Positions 12,964 to 40,894 are shown, numbered from the stretch's first letter. The stretch is 64,000 nucleotides of DNA from IMGVR_UViG_3300042350_002797:124001-188000, one strand, 5' to 3'. Notes: generated from the sequence alone by a model not told the origin. Made by a program: numbers and translations.

Positions 12964-12964
12964 A

Positions 12965-14137: not shown

Positions 14138-14153
14138 CGTTAAATAATCTACC

Positions 14154-22234: not shown

Positions 22235-22519
22235 TTAGATATACGGGCAGGCAATATTGAAAAAGCTTACTTCTTTTTCTACTTCGAATCCGATCTCAGT
22301 TACGTATTGGATACTGTTGTTAATAAGGGAAAGATTGGATCCTATATAGTATCTTCCATTAAGATTTTCGTATATCCATTTATCTAAAGATAGTAGTAAC
22401 CCAGGAGTAGCTTTGTTTATAATGATAAATTTAAAATGTTTTGCAGGAAAACTTACTTTACGCACATTAAGTGCGTTAAGTAAGTTTATTTTTCCTTTAC
22501 TTAAATTCGTAGTATGCAT
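22235..22519 (-). CDS. Hypothetical protein
   Basis: Probable start ATG 22519, overlapping the end of the vWA gene; W+..N..GRYY...IGFE..KE pattern. Confidence 0.55.
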   Translation of the reverse strand: MHTTNLSKGKINLLNALNVRKVSFPAKHFKFIIINKATPGLLLSLDKWIYENLNGRYYIGSNLSLINNSIQYVTEIGFEVEKEVSFFNIACPYI

Positions 22520-23663
22520 GAGTACCAAAAGGAGGAACGATTGTATCGTTGCCATGAATAATGAATACAGTATCGCAGTAATCTGGATCACCCCAGCTAT
22601 CCCAAGGATAACCGTCAGTGAACATAATCAATTTTTTAGGATTGATATCGTGTTCCTTCATGTAACTCCAATTACACATAAAATCAGTGCCGCCACCGCC
22701 CATTAGTTCATAGCCCATGATATCATCATTGTAGCCATCGAAGTCTGCTTCGTTATAGACTTTAGTATCAAAGCACCACAATTTAATTTTATAGTCTTTG
22801 TATTCTTCCATGATGCCCTTGATTTCACTGATGAAGTCTTTGCCCATTTCATCAGTGATAGATCCTGACATGTCGATGGAGCAACAGATGTCGATAGTTT
22901 CATCAAATTGGGTGCCCGGAAGAATAGCACTCATATGCCAAGCTTTGCGACTAGGACGTATGAAAGTGTAATCGTTTTTGATCACACTTTGAATTTGCTG
23001 ACGTAAAATTTCTCGCCAGTTCATCTTAGGTTCGGTCAGCTCTTTAATCATCCGTTGAACAGATGCTGGAGTATTACCTGCACCAGCAGCTTGAGCTGCC
23101 TGAATAGTAGCTTCTTTTATCTCGTCACGAATTTGTTTGAGCTCTTCTTTAGTGTAAGAAGGCCGACCGTCTTTACCTTCTTTCTCCCAATCGATGTGTT
23201 CATCTAACAATTGACCTAGAGCTGCTAATTGTTCTTCATCATATTTGTCAAAAATTTCATCATAGATTTGCTCAGTGCCTTTACCGTAGTGCTGAGGATC
23301 GTGAAAGATTTTAATGTCTGGAGGTACTTCTCCAATTCGATCACGAATTAATTGACCATTAACACTGTAATCAGCAGCCGCATTCCAGATAAAACGATCT
23401 CGACCTTCCACACGCATCATATGATCGAATACGTTATGAAGGATTTCGTGTGCTACAACGAACTCTACTTGTTTATTAGTCAGTTTATCAAAAAATTCTC
23501 GATTGTAATAAAGATTACGTCCGTCGGTTGCTGCTGTTGGGCACCAATCGCTACCATCTATAATCTTAAGACGAGTAGCCATATTGCCAAAAAATGGATG
23601 ACGCAGTAGCAGTCCGACTCGTGCTACCACAATTTTATCAATTACAGGGTCCAAATAACTCAT
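22497..23663 (-). CDS. Metallopeptidase-like (HExxH) + vWA domain protein (DUF2201-type)
   Basis: TAATDG, AHEILH, MIDAS IDMSGSI, GGGGTDF, FTDG. Confidence 0.9.
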   Translation of the reverse strand: MSYLDPVIDKIVVARVGLLLRHPFFGNMATRLKIIDGSDWCPTAATDGRNLYYNREFFDKLTNKQVEFVVAHEILHNVFDHMMRVEGRDRFIWNAAADYSVNGQLIRDRIGEVPPDIKIFHDPQHYGKGTEQIYDEIFDKYDEEQLAALGQLLDEHIDWEKEGKDGRPSYTKEELKQIRDEIKEATIQAAQAAGAGNTPASVQRMIKELTEPKMNWREILRQQIQSVIKNDYTFIRPSRKAWHMSAILPGTQFDETIDICCSIDMSGSITDEMGKDFISEIKGIMEEYKDYKIKLWCFDTKVYNEADFDGYNDDIMGYELMGGGGTDFMCNWSYMKEHDINPKKLIMFTDGYPWDSWGDPDYCDTVFIIHGNDTIVPPFGTHAYYEFK

Positions 23664-23693
23664 ATTTGCTCCGTTTAATTACTGTACTTATAC

Positions 23694-23722
23694 ATTATAA
23701 CAGGGCCCGCAGGCCCTGTCAA
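23694..23722 (-). promoter_or_regulatory. Consensus sigma70 promoter with a perfect inverted repeat in its spacer
   Basis: TTGACA-17 nt-TATAAT with TG extension; ACAGGGCC-TGCG-GGCCCTGT spans the spacer and half of the -35 box. Confidence 0.85.
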
Positions 23723-23733
23723 TGGATTTTGGA

Positions 23734-24825
23734 TTAGTTTCGATCTGTAGCCGCTGCAATATACTTACCATATTTTGCATGGAACTGATCAAAGCACTCA
23801 ATTTCGTCCGGATCCAACGGCAATTGATACTGAGTAAGTGCCAACTTAGTACCCATAACAACTAATTCAGTTTCAAAATTGTTCATAATGAAATTAAAGA
23901 AATTGTTAACTTTCTTATTCCAATCTTTTTCTTGCTTGTCGCAAGAATCTTTGAGTTCGTAGCACAGACTAACAGTTAAAGAGTACATAGCTGAAATCTC
24001 TTTAGACTCCATTTTAGTAACCTTGCCGCTCAAGATATCTTCCGGCTTAGGCATTTTGCTAGCAATTTTACGATGCGCCATAAATTTAACAGCAAGACCT
24101 TCACCTACAGCACCAGACACTAGATCGGTAAGTGTGCCTTCATCTTCTTCATCATCGAATAACAGTTCAGAAACGAATGCCCATGAACGGGGAGTAGCAA
24201 ATGCACGACTACCGCTCTTTGGATCGAAGTCGTATAGATCCTTCTTGCTGAAAGAAAGGAAACCAAGTACGTCTTTATGAATACGATTATCAGTGGCCCA
24301 ACCAAAATAATCATCCCAGTCTACACGCATTTCTAAGTGTACAAAACGATTAGCCAGCGGAGCAGGCATACGATAAGTAACACCCTTGTCGCTTTCACGG
24401 TTGCCCGCCGCAACAATTAATACATTGTCTGGCAAGTAGTAAGTGCCAACACGTCGATTGAGAACTAGCTGATAAGCAGCAGCCTGTACAGCGGGAGCCG
24501 CAGAGTTCATTTCATCCATGAACAAGATAATTTGTTTATGTTTTTTTGCCATAACAGCATCAGGCAATTCGATTGGAGGTGCCCAAGACATTTTTCCATT
24601 GTCACTGTCAAAATATGGAATACCTTTAATATCGGTAGGTTCCCACAAGCTCAGTCGAATATCGATAACATGAGCATCTAGTTCTTCGCCCATTTGTTTA
24701 ATAATGTCGGACTTACCAATACCGGGGGGACCCCAAAGAAAGATAGGGCGTTTAGCTTTAAAAGCACGACGCAGAGATTTTTTAGCGGCCTTAGGACCAA
24801 CTTGACGCGATGAAATTTCGCTCAT
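23734..24825 (-). CDS. MoxR-like AAA+ ATPase
   Basis: Walker A GPPGIGKS, Walker B LFMDE, AAGN, LANRF, TPRSW; adjacent vWA partner. Confidence 0.9.
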   Translation of the reverse strand: MSEISSRQVGPKAAKKSLRRAFKAKRPIFLWGPPGIGKSDIIKQMGEELDAHVIDIRLSLWEPTDIKGIPYFDSDNGKMSWAPPIELPDAVMAKKHKQIILFMDEMNSAAPAVQAAAYQLVLNRRVGTYYLPDNVLIVAAGNRESDKGVTYRMPAPLANRFVHLEMRVDWDDYFGWATDNRIHKDVLGFLSFSKKDLYDFDPKSGSRAFATPRSWAFVSELLFDDEEDEGTLTDLVSGAVGEGLAVKFMAHRKIASKMPKPEDILSGKVTKMESKEISAMYSLTVSLCYELKDSCDKQEKDWNKKVNNFFNFIMNNFETELVVMGTKLALTQYQLPLDPDEIECFDQFHAKYGKYIAAATDRN

Positions 24826-27334: not shown

Positions 27335-27780
27335 GAAACTTCTGAACGACCTTTCTCGATAGGAATGACATTAATGTAACCGGCACCGCGGGTAATATCT
27401 TGCCCTTCCTCTGCCAAAATATTACGTGCTAAGTCGCGAAACCAACGATCAACAATTTCTTCTTCTGGATCTCCATCGAATCCATATCCAGCTTGCTTCA
27501 ATTGTACAATAAAATGCTCATTCCAGTCAAGTTCAAAAAAGCCATTTCTAATATTATCTGGATTTACTTTAGTATCTAAAACTGCTACCCAAGGTTCGTT
27601 ATTAGCAGTAGCTCTTTCTTTCGGAGTCATTTTAGCTAATTCTTCTTGCCGCCGAGCTTCCTCTTCTTTGGCTAAAGCTTCGGCTGCACGAACTAGTGCT
27701 TCAGAAGTTTCTTTTTTTGCTCGTTCTCGTTCTTCCTCGAGTTTTTTAATACCTGTTATTTTTTTAATAAAATCTTTCAT
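27331..27780 (-). CDS. Hypothetical protein
   Basis: Likely start ATG 27780 (TAATG coupling to queE); EPWV.V...GFFELDWN..F motif. Confidence 0.65.
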   Translation of the reverse strand: MKDFIKKITGIKKLEEERERAKKETSEALVRAAEALAKEEEARRQEELAKMTPKERATANNEPWVAVLDTKVNPDNIRNGFFELDWNEHFIVQLKQAGYGFDGDPEEEIVDRWFRDLARNILAEEGQDITRGAGYINVIPIEKGRSEVS

Positions 27781-28628
27781 TAGGTTCCCCATGCATTTTT
27801 GAATAATGGAACTTGTAGTCTGTCACTGTATCTTAGTCCGTGTTTCATTGCTAATTCTGCAACACGGCGATTATTAAGAGCGTATACATTTTCGATACCC
27901 CCAACAGGCATTAAATAAATGTGCCCGCCAAAATCTTCCTGTTTATAAATTTCGATAACTTCTAATGCTTCGTTGACATCGTCTTCGCTAGCAACTACAA
28001 ATTTTAGATATGTATGTCCTAGCTCTTCATAACTTTTTACAATATCTGGTCGTATAGCATCTTCTCTTCTCTCTCCACTAACACTTAACTTTGGGCTCAC
28101 ACTAAATGTAAGATTATGATAGCCGTGTTTATGTGTCCATTTTTCTAGATATTTTCTAAAATCTTTTGATATTTCTTGAGTACCATTAGTTTCAAATGTG
28201 ATATCTTTCAATTTTTTTAATTTATCGTTATCTAATAAATCAGGATAGCTACGTTGCCACCCTAACAAAGGTTCTCCACCTGTTATAACTAAATGTATTC
28301 CTCTCCATTTATTATCAGGTAATAGATCTATCATTCTATTTGCTATGGCATCCACAGTGAGAACAGGACTTAGATCTTTAAATCTTGGATCCCAACTTGC
28401 ATAACTGTCGCATCCAGTTTCTACAATAGGAAGTTCCTCATATTTGTTGTACAAATGTACTACTTCTGCAATATCATCGTTGGCAGTGCTACGTTCTCCA
28501 GGAGGCATGCCGAACCCAGCACAGGTAAAGTTGCAACCAAATGTGCGTAAGAAAATAGAAGGAACACCCATGAAGCGTCCTTCTCCTTGTATACTATAAA
28601 ATAGTTCTGCTATTTTAATTTTACTCAT
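27780..28628 (-). CDS. queE: 7-carboxy-7-deazaguanine synthase (radical SAM)
   Basis: ELFYSIQGEG, FLRTFGCNFTC...CDS (third Cys after an insertion), ITGGEP, ETNGT, SVSPKL, LKFVV, YLMP, RLQ. Confidence 0.92.
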   Translation of the reverse strand: MSKIKIAELFYSIQGEGRFMGVPSIFLRTFGCNFTCAGFGMPPGERSTANDDIAEVVHLYNKYEELPIVETGCDSYASWDPRFKDLSPVLTVDAIANRMIDLLPDNKWRGIHLVITGGEPLLGWQRSYPDLLDNDKLKKLKDITFETNGTQEISKDFRKYLEKWTHKHGYHNLTFSVSPKLSVSGERREDAIRPDIVKSYEELGHTYLKFVVASEDDVNEALEVIEIYKQEDFGGHIYLMPVGGIENVYALNNRRVAELAMKHGLRYSDRLQVPLFKNAWGT

Positions 28629-29824: not shown

Positions 29825-30601
29825 TTATCTAGGAGCAAAGTCCTGTTGTAGTTTAATGTTGTCAAAGAATTCTTTTTTAGTTCCTTGATCATCTTTAAAA
29901 GCACCTTTTAATACTGTAGTCTGTGTAAGACTGCTATGTGCCATAATTCCGCGATTTTCACAGCAGCCATGTGTGGCTTGTATGTAAACACCTACATCTT
30001 TGGCATCGGTCGCCTTCATAATCTCTCTAGCAATGTCATTAGCTAATTCTTCTTGTAAAGTGCCACGGCGAGCACACCACTGAGCAATACGAGTATACTT
30101 ACTGAGACCGATAAGTTTATTAGCGGCGATAATACCGATATAAGCAACACCAGATACAGGTTGGTGATGGTGACTACACATACTACGAAGTTCACTGCGA
30201 ACAACAAGCATGCCTTCGTACCGATCTGTGCTGTCATTAGGAAATGCTGTGCAATCTGGTGCCAGTTCGTATCTACCCGCCATAATTTCATTGTAATACA
30301 TCTTAGCTAGTCGTCTTGCTGTTCCTTGACTGTTAGGATCGGTTTCTCGATCAATTAATAGTGCATCCAATACATGTTCGAATGCCACAGTAGCTTCGTC
30401 AATTAACTGTTGTCGAGTTGAGTCTGCGTAGATGTATTCACTAATATTGTCGCCTGCCCAGAATCTTTTACCATCTCGCTTCATTTTAAAACGAAGTTGA
30501 TCGCTTACTTTGCCTTCTGAGTAGCCACCATTTCCAGCCATTGCGTCTACTCCTGATTCGTGAATATCATCGTTACTTACATACATTTTGTTATAAACCA
30601 T
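29825..30601 (-). CDS. folE: GTP cyclohydrolase I
   Basis: T..R.AKMY, SMCSHH, IGLSKY.R, QE.L, HGCCENRG. Confidence 0.95.
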   Translation of the reverse strand: MVYNKMYVSNDDIHESGVDAMAGNGGYSEGKVSDQLRFKMKRDGKRFWAGDNISEYIYADSTRQQLIDEATVAFEHVLDALLIDRETDPNSQGTARRLAKMYYNEIMAGRYELAPDCTAFPNDSTDRYEGMLVVRSELRSMCSHHHQPVSGVAYIGIIAANKLIGLSKYTRIAQWCARRGTLQEELANDIAREIMKATDAKDVGVYIQATHGCCENRGIMAHSSLTQTTVLKGAFKDDQGTKKEFFDNIKLQQDFAPR

Positions 30602-30619: not shown

Positions 30620-30648
30620 ATTTTATTATATTATTTAGGTTTTGTCAA
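30620..30648 (-). promoter_or_regulatory. sigma70 promoter for folE, with an embedded TAAATA
   Basis: TTGACA-17 nt-TAAAAT; CCTAAATAA inside the spacer. Confidence 0.7.
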
Positions 30649-31428
30649 TCGCAAAAGAGTATTTTTCTTTACTGCGGCACCTAATGTATTTAGGTTTATG
30701 CCACGGTCTTCAGAATATTTTAGTAGTGCTTCTGTATCTTTAGGAAAACAGGCACCGCCAAAACCATAGTATCCATCTGGACCAGGCACTTGAGTATGAC
30801 TATCGCCTATACGTCGATCCATTCTTATTAGGTAGGCAAGGTGTTTCCAATCATAATTATGAGTGTTTGCTAGTTGATTTAATTCATTCATAAAAACAAC
30901 TTTAGTTGCTAGGAATGTATTAATAGAATATTTTACAAATGCCGCTTCGCCTATACCACAATATTCTACGTGTTTAATACCTGGTTGTATTTCTTTTAAA
31001 ATACGTGCTGTGTCACGTTGATAGGCTACCACAGAACCACCTATAATAACCCATTCTGTATTACCAAAATCTGTAACACTAGATTCTGCCCGTAAGAATT
31101 CAGGAACATATACTAAATTAGGTAATTTTTTATTCCATAATTCGTAAAAATCCGGAGGAGCAGTGACTTTGCTAATAATAGTGCCGTTATATCCTTCTAG
31201 ATTTTTTAAAACTTCTTCTACTATACTGGTATCGCAATATCCATTGGTGCCTTGCGGACTAGGAACACAAACAAATACACTAGAACATTCTTTTTTAATT
31301 TGATTGTAAGTAGCTGTATAACCTTTAGCAGGATCTAAAATTATAGGTTCGAAAGATGTTATCAAGTTTTGAGTTATAGCTTCGCCTACGTACCCGTGCC
31401 CAATAATGCCAATTTTTTCATAAATCAT
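30631..31428 (-). CDS. UDP-glucose/GDP-mannose dehydrogenase-family protein (short form lacking the C-terminal domain)
   Basis: GIIGHGYVG, FVCVPSP, PEFLR, KY..N.FLA.KV.F.NE, GFGGACFPKD (catalytic Cys). Confidence 0.9.
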   Translation of the reverse strand: MIYEKIGIIGHGYVGEAITQNLITSFEPIILDPAKGYTATYNQIKKECSSVFVCVPSPQGTNGYCDTSIVEEVLKNLEGYNGTIISKVTAPPDFYELWNKKLPNLVYVPEFLRAESSVTDFGNTEWVIIGGSVVAYQRDTARILKEIQPGIKHVEYCGIGEAAFVKYSINTFLATKVVFMNELNQLANTHNYDWKHLAYLIRMDRRIGDSHTQVPGPDGYYGFGGACFPKDTEALLKYSEDRGINLNTLGAAVKKNTLLRLTKPK

Positions 31429-31640: not shown

Positions 31641-31813
31641 TATTCGACAAGTTCCATTTCCTCTATCATAGGATAATAGATCCAATTCATTTTTTCTTTT
31701 AATTCTTCGCACATAGCCTGAGCAGCTTCTTCTGCACGTTCTTTAGTATAATAGAGTCTTTCCATAGCTCTGTCGCCCTCAGTATTTGTAGCCGATGCAA
31801 GGTAAACTATCAT
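31640..31813 (-). CDS. Small hypothetical protein (57 aa, not in ORF track)
   Basis: MIVYLASATNTEGDRAMERLYYTKERAEEAAQAMCEELKEKMNWIYYPMIEEMELVE*; ATGA overlap with the HIT stop and TAATG overlap with the next gene. Confidence 0.65.
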   Translation of the reverse strand: MIVYLASATNTEGDRAMERLYYTKERAEEAAQAMCEELKEKMNWIYYPMIEEMELVE

Positions 31814-32181
31814 TTTCTATAATTCCCTTTATCCGGAATGACATGTCTAACTCCTCCTCTTGGATCTTCCATATCGCCTTTGCGTCGAGGTATCATATGC
31901 ACATGCGGATACATTACTGTTTGGCCAGCTGCTTCTCCAACATTTTGGCCGATGTTAAAAGCATCCCACCTTTCAGCTTCAACACCTTCGTGTCCGAACT
32001 TGTAGGCTGCTTTGTAGCATTCCCAGAGATTGTTCCAGTTTTCTTCGGTAGGCACAAATAACAAATGCCCTGGGGTAACTGCGTAAGCGTCTCTAAAGAC
32101 CCAGAAGTCTTTAGTTCTGTATTCAATTTCTGTCCACGGTGCTCTTTTTTCATTTAAGGCCTTTTCAATATCTGTCAGCAT
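31810..32181 (-). CDS. HIT-family nucleotide hydrolase
   Basis: D.Y.VTPGHLLFVP, N.G..AGQTV..PHVHMIPR. Confidence 0.92.
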   Translation of the reverse strand: MLTDIEKALNEKRAPWTEIEYRTKDFWVFRDAYAVTPGHLLFVPTEENWNNLWECYKAAYKFGHEGVEAERWDAFNIGQNVGEAAGQTVMYPHVHMIPRRKGDMEDPRGGVRHVIPDKGNYRK

Positions 32182-32545
32182 ACTCGTTCCAAACCATATT
32201 CATTAATGTAGAATAATTATCCCAGGCCTTTTTAACAGCAGGATTATTATTTCTTGCTTTAATCTCAATCATTTCTTTACGCTTCATATGATTGATGTAA
32301 TCTTGATCTCCACGAGATTTAACAATTACGTCATTCATTCTTTGATCAATTTCGGCTAAGGCATGAAAGTTATCTTTAGGTATTAGAATATCATAACACT
32401 CTAACTCTTCTGTAGCAAAATAAAAATCATGTGCATCCTGATAAGTGCTAACCTGTGGTGGTTTAGCCTTTCTAATAGTGCGTGAACTATGACGTAATTG
32501 AATATCCCAATTACAGCAGAAACGATCTAGTTCTTTATTATCCAC
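32165..32545 (-). CDS. Hypothetical protein
   Basis: Probable GTG start at 32545; C-terminal NPAVKKAWDNY helix. Confidence 0.55.
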   Translation of the reverse strand: MDNKELDRFCCNWDIQLRHSSRTIRKAKPPQVSTYQDAHDFYFATEELECYDILIPKDNFHALAEIDQRMNDVIVKSRGDQDYINHMKRKEMIEIKARNNNPAVKKAWDNYSTLMNMVWNEYADRY

Positions 32546-33113
32546 GCCAAAATTCCTCCCAGGGATAGACAATCCAACAGTCTTCTTCGGCTTTGTTAAT
32601 TTCTATAGTTGAATAATCTACTTCTTCTTTGCTAGCAAGATTATTATGAATCACGGCAAATCTTACGTTGTTATGAAAGATATTTTTCCAAGCATGATTA
32701 TTTGGAAGGCATCCACTGGGCCAGTCTTTTTTAATCCAGGCAATAGTAGCACCGGTATCGTTAATGTCATCTACTATCAAAATCTTTTTACGTAGATCTC
32801 GATTAGTAGGATCGTGACGTACAGGCAATCCAGTAATCTCAAAATGCTCATACCCTCGATCATTCATAGGAACATATCCAAAAGCATCTTCGGCCATGCC
32901 TAAGTCGCTCACACACTCGCCACCGTCACGTAAACTGACCTGTAATGGTCGCATAGGAATATCGAGGTATTGACTAAGCATTACAGCAGGAACAGCACCA
33001 CCGCGTGTGATTCCTACAATGTAATCTGGACGCCAGTTATCTTTTTGTAATTGCCTAGCAATTTCGATAACACTGCCTTGAATATCCGACCAAGTTACAT
33101 GTATTTTTTTCAT
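32538..33113 (-). CDS. Type I phosphoribosyltransferase (Gpt/xanthine-guanine-like)
   Basis: IVGITRGG.VPA, PRPP loop ILIVDDINDTGAT, WIVYPWE; likely start ATG 33113. Confidence 0.9.
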   Translation of the reverse strand: MKKIHVTWSDIQGSVIEIARQLQKDNWRPDYIVGITRGGAVPAVMLSQYLDIPMRPLQVSLRDGGECVSDLGMAEDAFGYVPMNDRGYEHFEITGLPVRHDPTNRDLRKKILIVDDINDTGATIAWIKKDWPSGCLPNNHAWKNIFHNNVRFAVIHNNLASKEEVDYSTIEINKAEEDCWIVYPWEEFWRG

Positions 33114-33322
33114 CTTACACCATTTGCTAAGGTTGTCCAAAGTTTAGAGACTTCTTCTTGATTTAGAAAGAAATCGTATGTACTAGAATTGGTTAATTCG
33201 CCTTTGTCGTTATACTGTTCCCCAGTAAACATAAGATGTTTAAGTCCGTCTGGTTTCATACAGTCATTAACTTTTAAACGAAGCTTCCAAGCCGGTTGAT
33301 CTGTTATTAGTTGTTCAATCAT
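33110..33322 (-). CDS. Small hypothetical protein
   Basis: Likely start ATG 33322 (ATGA overlap). Confidence 0.55.
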   Translation of the reverse strand: MIEQLITDQPAWKLRLKVNDCMKPDGLKHLMFTGEQYNDKGELTNSSTYDFFLNQEEVSKLWTTLANGVR

Positions 33323-33682: not shown

Positions 33683-34078
33683 CTACTTGTATCCTTTACG
33701 TTCTCTTTCTTTTCCGTCAAAATCTTCTTTAACCATTTTATAAACTTCTTTAAATTTTCTGTATGCGATTTCCAGTCCAGGATATTCTTTACACATTTCT
33801 TGAACACGTTCGTAATCTGGAAATCTACCATCAAACTCGTCTTTATAAAAATTAGTAAAAGTAGTAAAAGAATCGATACCAGTTAAATCTACTGTTTCTA
33901 TATTGCCTATTGTATAAGATCCTGAATTATAAGGTGTACCTGTTAATGTTATAATGTCCGATGTGTTCAAACTTGGGAGGCTATTCACATCCCAAGTTAC
34001 AGTGATATCATCAGATTTTAAAGATTCTGTTTCATCTAAGGTTACTGTATAAATTGGTTCCTGAGAAGAATTGTTCAC
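33683..34078 (-). CDS. Hypothetical protein
   Basis: T/S-rich N-terminus; C-terminal MCKEYPGLEIAYRKFKEVY. Confidence 0.6.
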   Translation of the reverse strand: MNNSSQEPIYTVTLDETESLKSDDITVTWDVNSLPSLNTSDIITLTGTPYNSGSYTIGNIETVDLTGIDSFTTFTNFYKDEFDGRFPDYERVQEMCKEYPGLEIAYRKFKEVYKMVKEDFDGKERERKGYK

Positions 34079-35126
34079 GTAAAGCCTCCGTTTGTTTGTA
34101 CAACATTGGCAATCTTGTTTCGTAAAAATTCATGTGATCTATTATTGTTTTTACTAACATCTGCCTATGATCCATATAATGGTCCCACGTATCCGTCCAG
34201 TTGCTAGGATATTTGAAATTGTTAAAGTACATTTCTGTATATGAAAGTCTGTCTGGCACCATAGGAATAGCATTAAGAACACAACCTTCGTAACAACTAA
34301 TTCCTAGTGTTTCTTGTAGATTAGCACTAAACACAATTTTTGCTTCACCCAATAAGTTATGATATTCATTTTTCGTCAAGTCTTGTTCTTGGCAAATTAT
34401 AAATTCATACTGAGGTAGTAATTCTTTTAAATCTCTAAAAATATTCACCTGCTTTTCTGGAGCAAGTCTGTGTGGGAAAAGAATCAGATCTCTTTTTTTC
34501 ATTCCTTGATATTGTGTAAAAATATCTTGGAAATACTCCATAGGCCAGCCAGAACGAATTATTTTTTGACTGTTTAATAAGTCTTCGAAATCCTCTTGAT
34601 ACCAAGGATTTTCACTCTTTAAACCATTCATTAATAAATTGTCTACAAACATCTTAATATGAAAATCTGTAGCAAAATAATTATGATCGATAGCATCAAA
34701 GAATGACTTTTCAGCATATCGAACCCACGGCTTATTGCCAATAAGTCTGCCTAAAAAGTCTTGGGGATCATAACTACCGGCGTGCCACAGTGCGTGTATT
34801 TTAACAGGTATACTAAGTAAGCTACTCATGTATTTTAAATTAATAATACCTGGATGCCAAGCATCTGTAAATAAAAAATGATCGTGAGCTTTTATTTTGC
34901 CAGTAGTAAATAATCGGCTAATCTCTTCAATTTGACAAGACTTGTAGATATTAGTGCCACCAAAATTAAGGAAGGCGCCAGGAGTAGTGGCACGAGGAAT
35001 ATCCTCAGGGCCAGAGATAACTTCAACATTTTTATGAACCTTTCGTAATGTTCGGGGTAAATGTTCTTTCCATTGAGCAGTATAACGTGTTTCTACTGCT
35101 TCTAAGTCTACAATATAGATAGTCAT
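34032..35126 (-). CDS. GT-B fold glycosyltransferase (GT4-like)
   Basis: WHAGSYD, FPHRLAPEKQ, FSANLQETLGISCYEG (ExxGxxxxE donor-binding motif), P+VP.RLSY.EM. Confidence 0.85.
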   Translation of the reverse strand: MTIYIVDLEAVETRYTAQWKEHLPRTLRKVHKNVEVISGPEDIPRATTPGAFLNFGGTNIYKSCQIEEISRLFTTGKIKAHDHFLFTDAWHPGIINLKYMSSLLSIPVKIHALWHAGSYDPQDFLGRLIGNKPWVRYAEKSFFDAIDHNYFATDFHIKMFVDNLLMNGLKSENPWYQEDFEDLLNSQKIIRSGWPMEYFQDIFTQYQGMKKRDLILFPHRLAPEKQVNIFRDLKELLPQYEFIICQEQDLTKNEYHNLLGEAKIVFSANLQETLGISCYEGCVLNAIPMVPDRLSYTEMYFNNFKYPSNWTDTWDHYMDHRQMLVKTIIDHMNFYETRLPMLYKQTEALREQFFSGTNLYSNLR

Positions 35127-35350
35127 TAGCGATCTTTTTGTTTACGATAGTTATTGTTACGACCTTTGAAATTCCTGTTAGCTTGTAGAAATCTCTTCCA
35201 TACATCGCTTTCTTTATTATAAAGATCTGCCTGATTAAAAGGCAGTAACTCGAAACGACAAAAGTCGAGCAATGCTTCTAAGTCGTCAAAGATTTTAACG
35301 ATGTTAGGATTGTTATCGAAGTATGCATAGCCTTTGTAATTTTTAGCCAT
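35126..35350 (-). CDS. Small hypothetical protein
   Basis: Start ATG 35350 with AAGGA SD; IFDDLE..LDFCR....FN.ADLY. Confidence 0.65.
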   Translation of the reverse strand: MAKNYKGYAYFDNNPNIVKIFDDLEALLDFCRFELLPFNQADLYNKESDVWKRFLQANRNFKGRNNNYRKQKDR

Positions 35351-35372
35351 TTTTGTTTCCTTGTTTATTAAA

Positions 35373-35768
35373 TTAATATTTGATAAAACTACCATTTTCT
35401 CCATCTTCGGAGACCTCGATCCAAACTTCTCTATTTGGATACTTTTTTGAAATCATGTCATACAAATCATCTGACATCATTTCGCAACTTTTATAATCTA
35501 ATTGCAATACAGCTTGGTCGCCATTATACAATTCTTCAAGCCATCTTTTAAACTGGATGAACTCAATGTCTCTGTCATTGTGATTAACGCCAATCCAGAC
35601 ACGAAAATGAAAGATATGGCGATGAGGATGGCCGAGGAACGAAACGTCATATTTGTCTCCTGTTGCTAGGTTAGGATCAGTTAATGCTGCTGGATATTTA
35701 TGAATACCTTCTTTACGAAAGGTAACCCAAATCATTTTATTTGGTCTTATGTCTTGTTTGATTATCAT
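35373..35768 (-). CDS. QueD-like T-fold protein of the DpdL (CDG decarboxylase) type
   Basis: LGHPHRHIF (LxxxHRHxF) instead of the QueD CxxxHGH motif; DRDIEF, SCE, VSEDGENG. Confidence 0.7.
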   Translation of the reverse strand: MIIKQDIRPNKMIWVTFRKEGIHKYPAALTDPNLATGDKYDVSFLGHPHRHIFHFRVWIGVNHNDRDIEFIQFKRWLEELYNGDQAVLQLDYKSCEMMSDDLYDMISKKYPNREVWIEVSEDGENGSFIKY

Positions 35769-36307
35769 TTGTATTCAAAAAAATCGTTAAAGGTTGATTT
35801 ACTCATTGATTCAATTTTCTTCATAGATCCTACAGGTATTCGAAATACATAAGAATTTTCTGTTCTTTGTTCAAAATGACCGTATTCTGATCCTCTTATG
35901 TATGAAGACCTATCTCCATTAATTATTTTCTGTCTTCCAATTTCGTAAGCTTCTTCTATTTTTTCTTGTATGTATGGATCTGTAAAATCGAATAAATCTT
36001 GGTTCGTGACTATTCCATCGGCAGTAGTTATTCTAAATTGCTTTTGTAGTTTTTCAAAAATATGAGTTTGTTTATAAGATAAAGAACAAATATCTTGAAC
36101 AGTTATAGTTCCTACACTATTGGCAGAACCAGAATTTACATCTTTAGTTTTAACTTCTATACCAATCTGTTGTAAATCTGCGCCAGGGCCTTGGTTAATG
36201 TTCCACCCATCTCTAGACATAACTTGTTCAAATTGTTTTCCTCGAATACTATGATCTTTAGATAATACAGTACCAGTATAATCTTTTTTGATTCGTTTAA
36301 TTTTCAT
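35765..36307 (-). CDS. MutH/Sau3AI-like PD-(D/E)xK endonuclease
   Basis: RGKQFE...N.GPGADL..IGIEVKT; downstream EKI..AYE..RQKIING and YVFRI resemble the Sau3AI/MutH layout. Start ATG 36307 (ATGA overlap). Confidence 0.65.
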   Translation of the reverse strand: MKIKRIKKDYTGTVLSKDHSIRGKQFEQVMSRDGWNINQGPGADLQQIGIEVKTKDVNSGSANSVGTITVQDICSLSYKQTHIFEKLQKQFRITTADGIVTNQDLFDFTDPYIQEKIEEAYEIGRQKIINGDRSSYIRGSEYGHFEQRTENSYVFRIPVGSMKKIESMSKSTFNDFFEYK

Positions 36308-36837
36308 ACTGGGCTGTCCTGTGTATATTGATCCCAATGTGTATACTTAGTTTTACGCATTAGATCGTGTAGTTGATGGGTCCATACTCCAGGATTAGTA
36401 GCACCCCAAGTACGGTCGTCAATTTTAAGTGTTGCGTTGTAGTTGTAAAGTTTAATGTAAGGTAATTTTACACTAATCATAGGAATAAATCTATCTTGTT
36501 CGCACCACCCTTCTTCGTGTATTTCTTCAGCATATTTGACATCGAAGTCTAAGCAGACCCAATATCCTGCCTCCAAGCATCCCATAATCCTGTTATCCCA
36601 AATTTTCCAGTTATCATATGTTGCCGGATTAAAACTTTGACTAGTACCAAAGTAAATTTGTTTAATACGTTTATCTTTATCTTCGAAGCTTTGAGAATCT
36701 TCTGCTATTGCAAGAATGTCTTTTAGACTCGGTGTTCCTACAACGAACAATGTGTACATACCGTGAGCTACAGTATGTTCTACTTCATAGCCTGTGAAAT
36801 AAGTTACATCTTGCCTTTGTTCTGTGTTTAATCCCAT
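36304..36837 (-). CDS. Conserved-looking hypothetical protein within the deazaguanine cluster
   Basis: FTGYEVEHT..GM.TLFVVG, IYFG..QSF, LKIDD..W.ATNPGVW. Confidence 0.65.
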   Translation of the reverse strand: MGLNTEQRQDVTYFTGYEVEHTVAHGMYTLFVVGTPSLKDILAIAEDSQSFEDKDKRIKQIYFGTSQSFNPATYDNWKIWDNRIMGCLEAGYWVCLDFDVKYAEEIHEEGWCEQDRFIPMISVKLPYIKLYNYNATLKIDDRTWGATNPGVWTHQLHDLMRKTKYTHWDQYTQDSPV

Positions 36838-37739
36838 TTAATATATCCTCTACTGTAGCCTTGTGGTCTGTTTAATCCATCTTCGAATGCTTGTTGCCAT
36901 TCAGTGTTGCGATTATAGCACTTAGTCCAGAATGTGTCAACTTTTAAATTATTTGTTTTTACCCAAAGCTCTGCTTCGTACATTGCATTATAAAATCCGT
37001 TATGTCTTGGACTAGGCATAGCAATAGTATTGGCATTCCAAAGTAGTTCGCTAAATGTAGTTGTGAATGATTCTTTTTCCGCAGCTATAATCCAAACGCC
37101 TTGCGGAGCCAACAGTTTACGTTTCAGCACTTCTGTGTGTTCTCTAATGTCAATAATCACATCATATTTTTCGTAACTTGGCTCTTGTACTAATACATTC
37201 TCATTTGCCCACAGTTCGTGATTGCTATTCCCCCAAACTTCAATAGTACCAAATTTGTAATAATCTAGTTTTAGTGTGTTGTAAGCAACCCAGGCAAGAA
37301 AGCCACTACCAATTATCAAACATTTAGATAGTTGTAGTATTTTGCTTTGAAGTAATGTGCTGTTTTGTTTGACAATGTTAATACCACAAGCTACTGGTTC
37401 TAAAATATATTTAGGCTCGGCGCTAGGAACTACTATAAATTCTCTAGCTCTAACATTGTAATAGTCGGCATATGCAGGCTCTCCTCGAGTCGCTACATAA
37501 TCGCCTTCTTTAACATTGAGTATTTGTCCACCAACTTTGGTAACAATACCTAATCCTTCGTGACCACTCATATGAGCAGGCAATGTAGGAAATTTGCCTG
37601 TCATCATATCTATATCACTACGGCAAACACCAGTCATAACAGCTTTAACTTCAATTTCAGTATCAGCAGGTTCTGGTTTAGTCCATTCTTCTTCTACAAA
37701 CTTACCATCACTGTATGTTCTAAGTAAACGTACTTTCAA
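36828..37739 (-). CDS. Zn-dependent (MDR) alcohol/sugar dehydrogenase
   Basis: GVCRSD, GHEG.G.V..VG, EPVAC, IIGSGF; likely TTG start at 37739 with GGAGA SD. Confidence 0.88.
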   Translation of the reverse strand: MKVRLLRTYSDGKFVEEEWTKPEPADTEIEVKAVMTGVCRSDIDMMTGKFPTLPAHMSGHEGLGIVTKVGGQILNVKEGDYVATRGEPAYADYYNVRAREFIVVPSAEPKYILEPVACGINIVKQNSTLLQSKILQLSKCLIIGSGFLAWVAYNTLKLDYYKFGTIEVWGNSNHELWANENVLVQEPSYEKYDVIIDIREHTEVLKRKLLAPQGVWIIAAEKESFTTTFSELLWNANTIAMPSPRHNGFYNAMYEAELWVKTNNLKVDTFWTKCYNRNTEWQQAFEDGLNRPQGYSRGYIKWD

Positions 37740-38611
37740 AAGTTCTCCATTCTTTCGTGAATCCAATAATCTATTGTATTTTGTTTACTCCAGAATTTGT
37801 CATTATCGAGATTACGTATTGCATCGTCGATCATACGTTCGTAAGCATCTTCTGGGCATAATCCTAATTCATATGTAAATGTGCTATTGCCGAAATCCAT
37901 TTCAATGTTACGTTTGTCTTTATCTAATGTGCGCCAGTCTGCGGTCAATTTCCATTTGTTACTAAATCGTATTTGAGCAAAGTCGTCTACATCGTATGTA
38001 CCATCTGAATTAACTGTGCCGTATTCTGTGTTTAATAAATCTTTTAAATGGTATCTCATCAAACTAGAACGATTATTCATAGCAGTAGTTAACCAGTCAG
38101 GGTTTAACGCTATATACAAGCTCAGTAAGTGAGGCATTAGATCTCTACTAACTCCACCATAAGCAAGTTTTTTTGTAGTAAACCAGCTTCCAGGACTAGG
38201 CACACGATCTTGATTTAACCAATTAAGTCTGACCCTGTCCGCCGATTGAGCAGATTCTTGTAATTCTTTGATGTTACTACGCCACATATTATTCTTCACC
38301 ATCATAAAACGTGTATCAGGAAAGGAGTGAACAAGAGTCATCCAATTACTAGCCGTGGCCACACCAGGCTTTTCGATAAACACAATTTTACATTCGTGGG
38401 AAATTTTTACAGCTAATTGAAAATGTGTAAAATTTGGTGTACAGATGTGAGCAGTATCAAAAGGGCCTCTAGCTAGTATAGCTGATACAGCATCAGGAAA
38501 GTCTGCTTTTTTACTAATATCAGAATCTACTGTTACAATCTCGGCTCCTAGATTGGTCAGTACATTTTTGTATAATTGACCGATACCCATGCCTATAATA
38601 AGACTTTTCAT
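37736..38611 (-). CDS. Gfo/Idh/MocA-family oxidoreductase
   Basis: IIGMGIG, ICTPNFTH, IEKPG, GG..RDLMPH, DVDD. Confidence 0.88.
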   Translation of the reverse strand: MKSLIIGMGIGQLYKNVLTNLGAEIVTVDSDISKKADFPDAVSAILARGPFDTAHICTPNFTHFQLAVKISHECKIVFIEKPGVATASNWMTLVHSFPDTRFMMVKNNMWRSNIKELQESAQSADRVRLNWLNQDRVPSPGSWFTTKKLAYGGVSRDLMPHLLSLYIALNPDWLTTAMNNRSSLMRYHLKDLLNTEYGTVNSDGTYDVDDFAQIRFSNKWKLTADWRTLDKDKRNIEMDFGNSTFTYELGLCPEDAYERMIDDAIRNLDNDKFWSKQNTIDYWIHERMENF

Positions 38612-39111: not shown

Positions 39112-39353
39112 TTTACATTTTCCTCATACTGTTTAAAAAGTCTAGTTACTGGTTCCATTCTTTCTTGAAAAATATCAGGACTTGTTTGAGATGTTTTATT
39201 CATATCATAATAATCAGGATAGTGTCGTAGACACCATCTTGCTTCATCTCTGATAATTTTAGGAACTCGGGGAGTATGCTGTGGGTTACACAAGTTTACT
39301 AACAGCTCTCTTGTTCTAAGCACAGCTCGAAATCTTTCATCTGGCAAAGTCAT
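39108..39353 (-). CDS. Small conserved phage protein
   Basis: MTLPDER.RAV...TPRVPK.IR..A...LRHYP motif. Confidence 0.65.
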   Translation of the reverse strand: MTLPDERFRAVLRTRELLVNLCNPQHTPRVPKIIRDEARWCLRHYPDYYDMNKTSQTSPDIFQERMEPVTRLFKQYEENVK

Positions 39354-40894
39354 TTTATACTTTCTTCAAGTTCATCAAGTTTATCTTCGGAAAAGTCTTC
39401 AACGACGTCAGATTGTACATTATCATTATCATTATCGTCAAAGAATTTGGCAAAATTGGTATTTGCGTTTATAGTGCGTTTTCCTGTGTAACCTCTAGTG
39501 CCAGGAATTGCCATCCAAAACTTACTAAATTCTTCTACGATTTGATCAGCAACTCCTCTATCACTAGTTGCAAAAATTGCATCTATTACGTCTTTAAAAA
39601 AGATTCTATCAAATTTTTCTTGAACTAGCATACCAGGACATAAACCCGCATCATATTGTCGATTGGCTTCTTGAACAGAACTAAGATGCATCCAAACATT
39701 ATGCCCCATGAGAATAGCATAAGTGAAACTATCCCAACTAGTTTTATTTTCTTTACCCATCCTATTTAGGTTACCAGGAGCGTAAACACAAACTTCGTTA
39801 GTTTTAACACCATCTAATACAGGGCTATTTTCTACATACTTGAATATCCCATCTTGAATTAATGTATCTCTAAATAATCTTGTATCTGTTGCGTATTGTT
39901 TATTATCTAAAGTAGGTAACATTCTATATAACCACTTCTTACGATCTTCAATTTCTGTCTGTATGTACATTTGGCCATTAGCAGTGGCCAAAAATGGACT
40001 TGCACAATCAAAACTAATAGTAAAGTTTTCATTATGATATTTTCTTACAGCACGTTGAATATCGGTAAGTAATAATGCCCATTCCAATTTACTTGTTCCT
40101 AAGAAGTGCATCCAGTCTTGTTTACCTTTTTCTAATAAACCGTCAAATCTTAAAGATACAAGTCTTTTCAAAGTGAGATGCAAATCGCACATATTTTGTC
40201 CACCCATAGCCCAACCGTTAAAATGTGCATCTGGAAATACCTTCGGATCGCAATAGTGTTTCATACGTTGATACCAATCTTCAGCATCTGAATGATTTTC
40301 ACCTTGTAACACGTTTAAAAATTTACAATTACCATTTCGATTTTTAATAAAGTAGTCATTATTTAGATATGTGCCTTGAACTGCTTCCATATAGGAATTA
40401 ATTTTACTAGCAGCAGCGCCTTCAGGACTACGAGCTACCCAAGCAGGAATATCTAAACACATTCCATAATCCATTAGACTGTCCATCCAAGTCAATACTT
40501 GACTACGTTTTTTCTGTGCAGCCGGACAATTAGGATCTTTCCAGTCGGCTTCCCACTTTCCTTTACCTATCTGGAATCCTCCAGAGTCCCCAAGAACCCA
40601 ACTGTCTCCATTTCTTGGACGATTCCTGAACATAGATTCTCTATCATCATTTTTAGCTAAATCTAAATTTGCGTGACCAGCAGAATATAAACACCACTTA
40701 TAATAGAATAATCCTTTTTGAGGATCTAGATAATTAAGTCCTTCGACATCGTTAATAAAGTTTTGTGGTATTCTGCTAGGTTGTACATAAGGATATCTAT
40801 GTCTCTGATATCCAATGAACGATGCATAAAAGCCGCTAGTAGCAGGTAAAAATAATGCATAATCGTTTTGTGTGGCAGTTAAATCTGTATTCAT
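39350..40894 (-). CDS. dpdA: tRNA-guanine transglycosylase-like DNA base-exchange enzyme (DpdA family)
   Basis: GDSGGFQ, LDIP, NVLQG, GWAMGG, HFLG, FDCASP, late HN; context of queE/folE and of clamp/polymerase. Confidence 0.82.
   Translation of the reverse strand: MNTDLTATQNDYALFLPATSGFYASFIGYQRHRYPYVQPSRIPQNFINDVEGLNYLDPQKGLFYYKWCLYSAGHANLDLAKNDDRESMFRNRPRNGDSWVLGDSGGFQIGKGKWEADWKDPNCPAAQKKRSQVLTWMDSLMDYGMCLDIPAWVARSPEGAAASKINSYMEAVQGTYLNNDYFIKNRNGNCKFLNVLQGENHSDAEDWYQRMKHYCDPKVFPDAHFNGWAMGGQNMCDLHLTLKRLVSLRFDGLLEKGKQDWMHFLGTSKLEWALLLTDIQRAVRKYHNENFTISFDCASPFLATANGQMYIQTEIEDRKKWLYRMLPTLDNKQYATDTRLFRDTLIQDGIFKYVENSPVLDGVKTNEVCVYAPGNLNRMGKENKTSWDSFTYAILMGHNVWMHLSSVQEANRQYDAGLCPGMLVQEKFDRIFFKDVIDAIFATSDRGVADQIVEEFSKFWMAIPGTRGYTGKRTINANTNFAKFFDDNDNDNVQSDVVEDFSEDKLDELEESIK

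What the first reader, a model, noticed from the sequence alone, without database searches (positions are those of the whole stretch)
35373..35768. QueD paralog with LxxxHRHxF and no QueC points to decarboxylated 7-deazaguanine
Seen: LGHPHRHIF replaces the CxxxHGH motif of true QueD, and neither canonical queD nor queC is in the window. Recalled from published work on phage dDG, not re-checked: this motif marks DpdL, the proposed CDG decarboxylase. Inference: the inserted base is 7-deazaguanine with a free C7, a possible acceptor for the GT two genes downstream (speculative). QueD activity would have to come from the host or elsewhere in the genome.
Basis: partly seen in the sequence, partly recalled or inferred. 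Interest (0 to 1): 0.6.

Follow-up and report, generated by a model that had tools for sequence, protein, structure and literature searches.

The report
DpdL-type deazaguanine gene beside a glycosyltransferase
This phage gene belongs to the known but biochemically unproven DpdL family, a QueD look-alike thought to strip the carboxyl group from a 7-deazaguanine precursor for DNA modification; here, and in hundreds of related phage contigs, it sits next to a glycosyltransferase that nobody has described, which hints that the final DNA base carries a sugar.

Summary
Window 35373-35768 (-) encodes a 131-aa protein with LGHPHRHIF at residues 45-53.

**Identity:** It is a DpdL-family member. It is 37% identical to Cellulophaga phiST CGPG_00067, the founding DpdL, and 55% identical to ACP17 DpdL. 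A confident model (pLDDT 95.5) is a T-fold closest to PTPS/QueD (Z 12.5-13.2). L45, H49 and H51 align with QueD C27, H31 and H33.

**Pathway:** The 364.5-kb phage genome encodes FolE, QueE and a DpdA-like transglycosylase in the window. A QueD lies outside it, so QueD need not come from the host. There is no QueC, PAPS-reductase-like or UbiD gene. This matches the published gene signature for 2'-deoxy-7-deazaguanine. DpdL's decarboxylase activity is still unproven.

**New here:**
- A GT4-type glycosyltransferase lies a median 232 bp from DpdL.
- It is present in 196 of 209 unique IMG/VR DpdL loci that have large DpdA types.
- It is present in 0 of 15 phiST-type (DpdA3) loci, the only type with proven plain dDG.
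- An XGPRT-like phosphoribosyltransferase and an unknown 177-aa partner, fused to DpdL in one metagenomic protein, also recur.

The ORF is a new member of a known family. The GT-linked module looks like an undescribed variant.

The parts
35373..35768 (-). DpdL-family T-fold protein (131 aa), a QueD paralogue and proposed 7-carboxy-7-deazaguanine decarboxylase. It carries the LxxxHRHxF motif at residues 45-53. Near-invariant residues are H23, H49, R50, H51, R66, E69, S94-C95-E96 and E121-D122.
39350..40894 (-). DpdA-like DNA-guanine transglycosylase (514 aa, 'group A'). Invariant motifs are D103-SGGFQ, QG, GWAMGG, HxLG and SFD296C, matching the TGT hallmarks.
34032..35126 (-). GT4/GT-B-type glycosyltransferase (364 aa) with an EX7E motif at E272-E280. 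It is the only member of this family in the genome, and it is linked to DpdL across lineages.
36304..36837 (-). Conserved 177-aa protein of unknown family. It is present in 75 of 80 related loci, has a homologue in ACP17 beside DpdA, and is fused N-terminally to DpdL in metagenomic protein P0172.
35126..35404 (-). Conserved 92-aa ORF between DpdL and the GT (72 of 80 related loci). Function unknown.
32538..33140 (-). Xanthine/guanine-type phosphoribosyltransferase (200 aa; PF00156). It recurs in DpdL phages: phiST, PA5oct, BUCT-ZZ01 and 39 of 54 related loci.
29825..30601 (-). GTP cyclohydrolase I (FolE), the first step of the 7-deazaguanine pathway.
27780..28628 (-). QueE (7-carboxy-7-deazaguanine synthase, radical SAM).
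30631..31428 (-). Short NDP-sugar dehydrogenase-like protein (265 aa). Variable accessory gene (21 of 80 related loci), possibly for tailoring the sugar donor.
36828..38611 (-). Zn-ADH-like (312 aa) and Gfo/Idh/MocA-like (291 aa) oxidoreductases. Variable accessory genes (19 of 80 related loci each), possibly for tailoring the sugar donor.
31810..32181 (-). HIT-family protein (123 aa). Accessory gene (31 of 80 related loci). Role inferred only.

Best explanation
The ORF encodes a DpdL-family enzyme: a T-fold paralogue of QueD that keeps the three zinc-binding histidines (H23, H49, H51) and the Glu that anchors the 2-amino-4-oxo-pyrimidine ring (E96). It has lost the catalytic Cys of QueD (L45) and gained conserved R50, R66 and E69. 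It belongs to a 13-kb island on the minus strand that encodes FolE, QueE, a DpdA-like transglycosylase, an XGPRT-like phosphoribosyltransferase and a GT4-type glycosyltransferase. QueD lies elsewhere in the genome and there is no QueC. The most likely course is as follows. GTP is converted by FolE, QueD and QueE to 7-carboxy-7-deazaguanine (CDG). DpdL binds CDG and removes the C7 carboxylate by metal-assisted decarboxylation, giving 7-deazaguanine (DG). DpdA then exchanges DG for guanine in phage DNA. Shown here: family membership, fold, motifs, gene complement and gene linkage. Inferred: the substrate, the decarboxylation and the order of steps. Because a glycosyltransferase is almost always adjacent to DpdL in this architecture, DG is probably an intermediate that is modified further, not the end product.
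For: Sequence: 37% identity (E 1e-9 against 2.3 Gb) to phiST CGPG_00067, which the paper names DpdL, and 55% to ACP17 ASD50405.1. Fold: AF2 model with pLDDT 95.5. Foldseek's best PDB hits are E. coli QueD 4ntm/4ntk (prob 1.0, TM 0.69/0.75). VIA-align gives Z 13.2 (rmsd 1.8 A, 96 aa) to P. horikoshii PTPS and Z 12.5-12.6 (rmsd 2.0 A, 108-109 aa) to E. coli QueD, above other T-fold families at Z about 10. hhalign maps H23=H16, L45=C27, H49=H31, H51=H33 and E96=the Glu of TSE. Gene complement: FolE, QueE, DpdA and a PRTase are in the window, and QueD is at G000:217545-218138. There is no QueC by PF06508 or by E. coli QueC, no PAPS-reductase-like gene and no UbiD. QueC is absent from 10 of 12 other DpdL phage genomes and from all 312 IMG/VR DpdL loci. 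phiST DNA has all G replaced by dDG (PMC10516641). One DpdL is fused to a YhhQ/Vut_1 domain of the preQ0-transporter family. GT linkage.
Against: No DpdL has been shown to decarboxylate CDG. phiST and ACP17 dpdL plus dpdA expressed in E. coli gave no dDG. Pfam PTPS and the NCBIfam QueD models do not match this protein even at E 10, and the profile-to-sequence hhalign probabilities are low (32-49%). The QueD relationship therefore rests on structure and on transitive homology. The only DNA chemistry known for a DpdL phage comes from DpdA3-type phages without a GT. This genome has a different DpdA group and a GT, so its end product may differ. The genome is a metagenomic IMG/VR record, so nothing can be measured.
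Confidence: 0.6

Rival explanations
1. DpdL acts after insertion. DpdA inserts CDG into DNA, and DpdL, alone or with the 177-aa partner, decarboxylates dCDG in DNA.
For: The authors consider that DpdA3 may insert CDG. dCDG exists in a virus DNA. Co-expression of DpdL with DpdA in E. coli failed.
Against: T-fold active sites are buried at subunit interfaces and bind free pterins or purines (established knowledge of the fold). The authors' model suggested action on the free base. One DpdL is fused to a base-transporter-type domain. No DNA-binding domain is detectable in a 131-aa single-domain protein.
Confidence: 0.12
2. DpdL is not a decarboxylase. It is a base-binding or otherwise catalytic T-fold protein that makes or presents a different 7-substituted deazaguanine. 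The real tailoring steps are done by the GT, the 177-aa protein or host enzymes.
For: Decarboxylase activity has never been seen. The 177-aa partner is conserved and fused to DpdL in one protein. The GT is tightly linked. X1, BCSR5 and one fusion protein add a PAPS-reductase-like ATP-PPase.
Against: DpdL is the only extra gene shared by all DpdL lineages, including phiST where the product is plain dDG. The conserved metal triad and acidic/basic residues indicate catalysis. Catalytic-site residues are the same in GT-linked and GT-free lineages.
Confidence: 0.15
3. A nucleotide-level route, as in tubercidin biosynthesis. The XGPRT-like PRTase converts DG or CDG with PRPP into a 7-deaza-GMP-type nucleotide, which reaches DNA through the polymerase. 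DpdL may act on the base or on the nucleotide.
For: The PRTase recurs in 4 of 13 DpdL lineages and lies inside the cluster in three of them. At E<=1e-5 its only phage homologues are the five phiST-type genome records, a lineage with proven full G replacement. The best NCBIfam match is xanthine PRTase. The tubercidin pathway uses CDG, a PRTase and a decarboxylase without QueC. phiST has a MazG/dUTPase-like gene next to DpdL.
Against: Every DpdL lineage where the locus is complete keeps a DpdA-type transglycosylase. The PRTase is missing from most lineages. A simpler role is salvage of the guanine released by DpdA back to GMP and GTP, the pathway's own precursor (inference).
Confidence: 0.1
4. 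It is simply a second, divergent QueD (CPH4 synthase).
For: The closest solved structures are QueD and PTPS, and the zinc triad is retained.
Against: The catalytic Cys of QueD is Leu in 90% or more of family members, and QueD without this Cys is inactive (PMC10516641). A separate QueD gene exists in the same genome. The QueD and PTPS family models do not match.
Confidence: 0.03

Closest known systems
DpdL of Cellulophaga phage phiST (CGPG_00067) and Acidovorax phage ACP17 (ASD50405.1), proposed CDG decarboxylase (Cui, Hutinet et al., NAR 2023, PMC10516641)
   Same: Same family: 37% and 55% identity, the same LxxxHRHxF motif, the same conserved His, Glu, Arg and Cys residues, and the same context of FolE, QueD, QueE and DpdA without QueC.
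   Different: phiST pairs DpdL with a small DpdA3 and has no glycosyltransferase. Here DpdL is paired with a 514-aa DpdA of another group, a GT4-type GT, a conserved 177-aa protein and, in this genome, sugar-nucleotide-type oxidoreductases. The ACP17 locus shares the GT and the 177-aa homologue, but the paper's main text does not mention them.
QueD (6-carboxy-5,6,7,8-tetrahydropterin synthase), E. coli, PDB 4ntk/4ntm
   Same: Same T-fold (Z 12.5, rmsd 2.0 A). The zinc-binding His triad and the substrate-anchoring Glu align.
   Different: The catalytic Cys27 is Leu and Gly32 is Arg. Identity is 17-19%. The PTPS and QueD family models do not match. A separate QueD is present in the genome.
TubF (UbiD-family decarboxylase) and TubC (PRTase) of the tubercidin pathway
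   Same: Same pathway logic: CDG is made without QueC, then decarboxylated to an unsubstituted 7-deazapurine, and a PF00156 PRTase is present.
   Different: The decarboxylase fold is unrelated (prFMN-dependent UbiD versus T-fold). No UbiD gene is in this genome. The product goes to a nucleoside antibiotic, not to DNA.
T4 alpha/beta-glucosyltransferases and HuiG (the huimycin GT acting on a 7-deazapurine base)
   Same: GT-B-type enzymes that add a sugar to a modified base, either in phage DNA (T4) or on a free 7-deazapurine (HuiG).
   Different: The acceptor here is unknown. No hydroxymethyl-pyrimidine pathway is present (no ThyA-family gene). The GT here is GT4-like with an EX7E motif and is not detectably related in sequence to the T4 enzymes; that comparison was not run.

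Membership tests
DpdL (proposed CDG decarboxylase) | Significant sequence similarity to the founding members (phiST CGPG_00067, ACP17 DpdL) | tested here: met
   37% identity at E 1e-9 and 55% at E 1e-34 by tblastn against 50,697 phage records. The hits fall exactly on those genes.
DpdL (proposed CDG decarboxylase) | LxxxHRHxF in place of the QueD motif CxxxHGH | tested here: met
   L45-GHP-H49-R50-H51-I-F53. These positions are 90% or more conserved in 40 diverse relatives and align to QueD C27, H31, G32, H33 and F35.
DpdL (proposed CDG decarboxylase) | T-fold, QueD-like structure | tested here: met
   AF2 pLDDT 95.5 with beta-beta-alpha-alpha-beta-beta topology. Top PDB matches are QueD and PTPS.
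DpdL (proposed CDG decarboxylase) | Genome encodes FolE, QueD, QueE and a DpdA but no QueC | tested here: met
   The genome is rated 100% complete.
DpdL (proposed CDG decarboxylase) | Converts CDG to 7-deazaguanine, with dDG in virion DNA | not testable with these tools
   Needs an enzyme assay and LC-MS of DNA. This has not been shown for any DpdL so far.
QueD / PTPS (PF01242, TIGR03367) | Match to the family models | tested here: not met
   No Pfam or NCBIfam match even at E 10 or E 1. The genome's real QueD scores E 4e-15.
QueD / PTPS (PF01242, TIGR03367) | Catalytic Cys of CxxxHGH | tested here: not met
   Leu at the aligned position.
DpdA / TGT superfamily (for the 514-aa neighbour) | TGT catalytic motifs (DSGGFQ Asp, the nucleophile Asp of FDC, GxxxGG) and profile similarity to TGT-like proteins | tested here: met
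   Invariant D103-SGGFQ, GWAMGG and SFD296C. hhalign gives 92% probability and E 6e-7 to the X1/ACP17/BUCT DpdA group. The motif register matches E. coli Tgt. Atlas features score 0.94 to PF01702 clusters. Pfam TGT itself does not match.
GT4-type (GT-B, retaining) glycosyltransferase (for the 364-aa neighbour) | Glycos_transf_1 domain with an EX7E motif | tested here: inconclusive
   The protein itself has no Pfam hit. Homologues in X1 and BCSR5 pass PF00534 (8e-12 and 9e-11), and ACP17 and PA5oct are sub-threshold for the same region. EX7E at 272-280 is aligned in all close homologues. Atlas neighbours are named GT family 1.

The most novel reading that the evidence does not exclude
In this architecture 7-deazaguanine is not the end product. 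Decarboxylation by DpdL would produce a base that the adjacent GT4-type glycosyltransferase then glycosylates, either as a free base before DpdA inserts it or in DNA afterwards. The sugar donor may be tailored in this genome by the NDP-sugar dehydrogenase, Gfo/Idh/MocA, ADH and HIT genes. That would be the first glycosylated purine analogue in a phage genome. It would also explain why ACP17 dpdL plus dpdA alone gave no dDG, and what the undefined modified G of PA5oct is. The conserved 177-aa protein would be a further required component.
Probability: 0.35. Interest if true: 0.85.

Novelty: new variant of a known kind. Interest (0 to 1): 0.6.

Why it matters
DpdL is the only proposed enzyme for making the unsubstituted 7-deazaguanine found in phage DNA, and its activity has never been reconstituted. 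This analysis shows that the family is very large (over 2000 50%-identity clusters). It also splits into two gene architectures. One is the phiST type (DpdA3, no GT), the only type with known chemistry (plain dDG). The other is far more common and has a large DpdA, a tightly linked GT4-type glycosyltransferase and a conserved unknown 177-aa partner; this window, PA5oct, ACP17, Phosso and X1 belong to it. That gives concrete candidates for the 'other unknown enzymes' invoked after the failed reconstitution. It also predicts that cultured phages such as PA5oct, already known to carry an undefined modified G, hold a new sugar-bearing deazaguanine. If confirmed, this would extend DNA glycosylation from hydroxymethyl-pyrimidines to purine analogues, with consequences for restriction evasion and for defence systems that sense modified G.

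Tried and rejected
**Searches that led nowhere**
- Direct family scans of the ORF (Pfam at E 10, NCBIfam at E 1) gave nothing. PHROGs gave only an unnamed family.
- Megablast of the 8-kb neighbourhood against phage records found no match.
- Single-sequence AF2 was useless (pLDDT 42). The alignment-based model was used instead.
- The HMM of the family against PDB sequences gave only marginal hits: PH0634 PTPS at E 0.057 and spurious bacterioferritin matches.
- hhalign of the family profile against single QueD sequences gave the expected residue register but low probability.
- The word-index protein search returned only relatives of 88% identity or more. The exhaustive representative search was therefore used once to obtain diverse relatives.
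- The paper's supplementary tables are not held, so its list of DpdL phages could not be compared.
- The DpdA-like profile against PDB sequences found nothing, and Pfam TGT does not match any of these phage DpdAs.
- The 177-aa partner could not be assigned to any Pfam or PDB family.
- A complex prediction of DpdL with the 177-aa protein returned no verdict. It counts neither for nor against binding.

**Readings considered and rejected**
- A hidden QueC-like ATP-PPase, PAPS-reductase-like gene or UbiD decarboxylase in this genome: none found.
- A hydroxymethyl-pyrimidine acceptor for the GT: there is no ThyA-family gene.
- A GT tied to DpdA rather than to DpdL. In Phosso the GT stays with DpdL while DpdA lies about 170 kb away. 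The DpdL-less Vibrio phage 2.275.O has a group-A DpdA with no GT beside it.

Full report
**1. The observation**

The ORF at window 35373..35768 on the minus strand encodes 131 aa. Residues 45-53 read LGHPHRHIF. Gene callers at JGI and NCBI give the same 131-aa product on other contigs that carry the identical protein. The window is positions 124001-188000 of a 364,554-b IMG/VR virus record rated 100% complete.

**2. Is it a QueD paralogue?**

Family models say nothing. There is no Pfam hit even at E 10 and no NCBIfam hit, and PHROGs returns only an unnamed family (phrog_17812, E 5e-33).

The protein family is very large. The exhaustive search of 50%-identity representatives found 2018 clusters at E<=1e-3 and 463 at E<=1e-10.

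In an alignment of 40 diverse members (A1), these residues are 90% or more conserved: H23, A28, V42, L45, H49, R50, H51, F53, V61, R66, E69, F70, S94, C95, E96, Y110, E121, D122 and G126.

With that alignment AlphaFold2 gives a confident model (pLDDT 95.5, pTM 0.84) with beta-beta-alpha-alpha-beta-beta topology.
- Foldseek's best PDB matches are E. coli QueD 4ntm/4ntk (E 2e-5, prob 1.0, TM 0.69/0.75, 17-18% identity), followed by other PTPS proteins.
- VIA-align gives Z 13.2 (rmsd 1.8 A, 96 aa) to P. horikoshii PTPS and Z 12.5-12.6 (rmsd 2.0 A, 108-109 aa) to E. coli QueD. Other T-fold families score lower: dihydroneopterin aldolase about 10, QueF-like 9.6 and urate oxidase 9.5.
- hhalign of A1 against E. 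coli QueD has low probability (32%) but puts H23 on H16, L45 on C27, H49 on H31, R50 on G32, H51 on H33, F53 on F35, and E96 on the Glu of the TSE motif.

So the zinc triad and the ring-anchoring Glu are kept, and the catalytic Cys is lost.

**3. Is it DpdL?**

tblastn against 50,697 phage records finds 28 records. The Cellulophaga phiST hit (37% identity, E 1e-9) is exactly CGPG_00067. The Acidovorax ACP17 hit (55%) is ASD50405.1, next to QueE.

PMC10516641 names CGPG_00067 DpdL and states that CxxxHGH is changed to LxxxHRHxF in DpdL. It reports that phiST DNA has all dG replaced by dDG (302,000 per 10^6 nt). It also reports that expressing phiST and ACP17 dpdL with their dpdA in E. coli gave no dDG. 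Family membership is therefore firm, and the enzymatic function remains a proposal. A later preprint reports another phage, Vibrio VP1, with full 7-deazaguanine substitution.

**4. The rest of the pathway in this genome**

All of the following window genes are on the minus strand.
- FolE is at 29825..30601 (PF01227, E 2e-39).
- QueE is at 27780..28628. It matches five NCBIfam QueE models at E 1e-15 to 2e-8 and is 31-33% identical to the X1 and Ahp1 QueE.
- The 514-aa ORF at 39350..40894 has no Pfam hit. Its family keeps an invariant D103-SGGFQ, QG, GWAMGG, HxLG and SFD296C, which are the TGT hallmark motifs.
- The 514-aa family's profile matches the DpdA group of X1 (annotated as queuine tRNA-ribosyltransferase), ACP17 and BUCT-ZZ01 at 92% probability and E 6e-7. 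It aligns in register with E. coli Tgt around GYAVGG, LMGVG and MFDCVMP.
- The Atlas feature search lists TGT clusters at 0.94. A homologue in Vibrio phage 2.275.O lies beside QueF, a YhhQ-type transporter and a Que gene.
- QueD is outside the window at G000:217545-218138 (197 aa). It matches PF01242 at E 4e-15 and TIGR03367 at 3.5e-8, and is 52.5% identical to ACP17 QueD over 158 aligned aa.
- QueC is absent by PF06508 and by E. coli QueC as query. No PAPS-reductase-like or UbiD gene is present either.

Each pathway family has a single hit in the whole genome. All except QueD lie between window 27.8 and 40.9 kb.

**5. Does the 'DpdL without QueC' pattern hold more widely?**

Among 12 other DpdL phage lineages searched as whole genomes, QueC is absent from 10. 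D479 has a partial match 100 kb from its DpdL, and X1 has a sub-threshold match. In 312 IMG/VR loci carrying DpdL, with flanks of up to 8-10 kb, an HMM of E. coli QueC found none. The same HMM did find QueC in the DpdL-less phage 2.275.O.

**6.

The 364-aa ORF at 34032..35126 has homologues adjacent to or near DpdL in several phages:
- Phosso (47%)
- the PA5oct group (41%)
- ACP17 (34%)
- Xanthomonas X1 and BUDD (25%)
- Burkholderia BCSR5 (23%)

The X1 and BCSR5 homologues pass Pfam Glycos_transf_1 (8e-12 and 9e-11). ACP17 and PA5oct are sub-threshold for the same region. An EX7E motif (E272-E280) is aligned in all close homologues. Synechococcus phage BUCT-ZZ01 has two Glycos_transf_1 genes flanking its DpdA-DpdL pair.

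In IMG/VR, 241 unique DpdL loci were sorted by the DpdA type found in the flank, and the presence of a GT was counted:

| DpdA type in the flank | Loci with a GT |
|---|---|
| Group A (this window's type) | 186 of 199 |
| Group B (ACP17/X1 type) | 9 of 9 |
| Group D | 1 of 1 |
| DpdA3 (phiST type) | 0 of 15 |

The gap between the GT and DpdL has a median of 232 bp and is 500 bp or less in 209 of 272 loci.

The GT follows DpdL, not DpdA. In Phosso, DpdA lies about 170 kb away and the GT stays beside DpdL. Phage 2.275.O has a group-A DpdA with QueC and QueF, no DpdL, and no GT beside the DpdA.

This genome has no ThyA-family hydroxymethylase that could supply a pyrimidine acceptor, and no second GT of this family. 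The main text of the 2023 paper mentions neither a glycosyltransferase nor a phosphoribosyltransferase, and my literature searches found no report of a glycosylated deazaguanine in phage DNA. PA5oct DNA resists G-containing restriction sites and is thought to carry a modified G of unknown structure (PMC12191111).

**7. Other recurrent partners**

*The 177-aa protein.* The ORF at 36304..36837 is present in 75 of 80 loci of this lineage. It has a homologue next to DpdA in ACP17, and it is fused to the N-terminus of DpdL in metagenomic protein P0172. No family could be assigned to it.

*The phosphoribosyltransferase.* The PF00156 PRTase at 32538..33140 best matches xanthine PRTase models.
- At E<=1e-5 its only phage homologues are the five phiST-type records.
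- PRTases of the same type sit inside the clusters of PA5oct (between DpdL and QueE) and BUCT-ZZ01 (between QueE and QueD).
- It is present in 39 of 54 related loci with enough flank.
- Two roles fit. One is salvage of the guanine released by base exchange back into GTP, the pathway's own precursor. The other is a tubercidin-like nucleotide route.

*Variable accessory genes.* The NDP-sugar dehydrogenase-like, Gfo/Idh/MocA-like, ADH-like and HIT genes of this window are found in only 19-31 of 80 related loci. They may tailor a sugar donor; this is inference.

**8. Mechanism**

Shown: family, fold, conserved residues, gene complement and gene linkage.

Inferred: DpdL binds CDG through E96 and the metal site, R50 and R66 may hold the carboxylate, and loss of CO2 gives DG. 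DpdA then exchanges DG for G. The catalytic residues are the same in GT-free and GT-linked lineages, so the same reaction is expected in both, and the GT would act on its product.

My confidence in DpdL family membership is about 0.95. My confidence in the full statement, including decarboxylation, is about 0.6. My estimate that the end product carries a sugar is about 0.35.

**9. Verdict**

The ORF itself is a new member of a known family. The GT-linked module around it is, as far as the literature held here shows, an undescribed variant with clear, cheap experimental tests in cultured relatives.

Noticed in passing
G000:217545-218138 (outside the window); L010:4778-5254; L011:3487-3981: The QueD genes of DpdL phages carry CxxxHGY, not the canonical CxxxHGH. 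This holds for this genome, ACP17, phiST and 53 of 57 unique QueD ORFs in IMG/VR DpdL loci. The aligned third zinc ligand would be Tyr.
   Followed up: partly
window 12103-15071 and 19322-19804 (+): Four radical-SAM ORFs of about 400-470 aa lie close together on the plus strand (PF04055, E 3e-16 to 2e-9). Their function was not examined.
   Followed up: no
window 35765-36337 (-): A 190-aa ORF immediately upstream of DpdL has only weak MutH and 5'-nucleotidase-C hints (E 0.02-0.12). It is present in only 8 of 80 related loci.
   Followed up: partly
proteins P0193, P0208, P0172 (metagenomic): Three natural DpdL fusions were seen: YhhQ/Vut_1-type transporter domain plus DpdL; DpdL plus a PAPS-reductase-like ATP-PPase domain; and the 177-aa partner plus DpdL.
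   Followed up: partly
L099:2843-3376 (Xanthomonas phage X1); L100:8024-8911 (Burkholderia phage BCSR5): Two GT-linked DpdL clusters also encode a PAPS-reductase-like ATP-PPase (PF01507, E 1e-13). This is the same superfamily as QueC, so these lineages may activate the CDG carboxylate differently. This genome has no such gene.
   Followed up: partly
window 22497-24825 (-): A MoxR-type AAA ATPase lies next to a DUF2201 metallopeptidase/VWA protein. The pair is unrelated to the finding.
   Followed up: no
L001:647-1465 (G000 about 216730-217548): The gene next to QueD looks like a 3-deoxy-8-phosphooctulonate (KDO-8-P) synthase, judged from its sequence alone. No family scan was run.
   Followed up: no
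L102:6230-7381 (Vibrio phage Bakedbeans gp176); L105:6464-7345 (Chryseobacterium phage MA9V-3): In these phages DpdL is the C-terminal domain of a longer protein (383 and 293 aa). The N-terminal parts were not identified.
   Followed up: no
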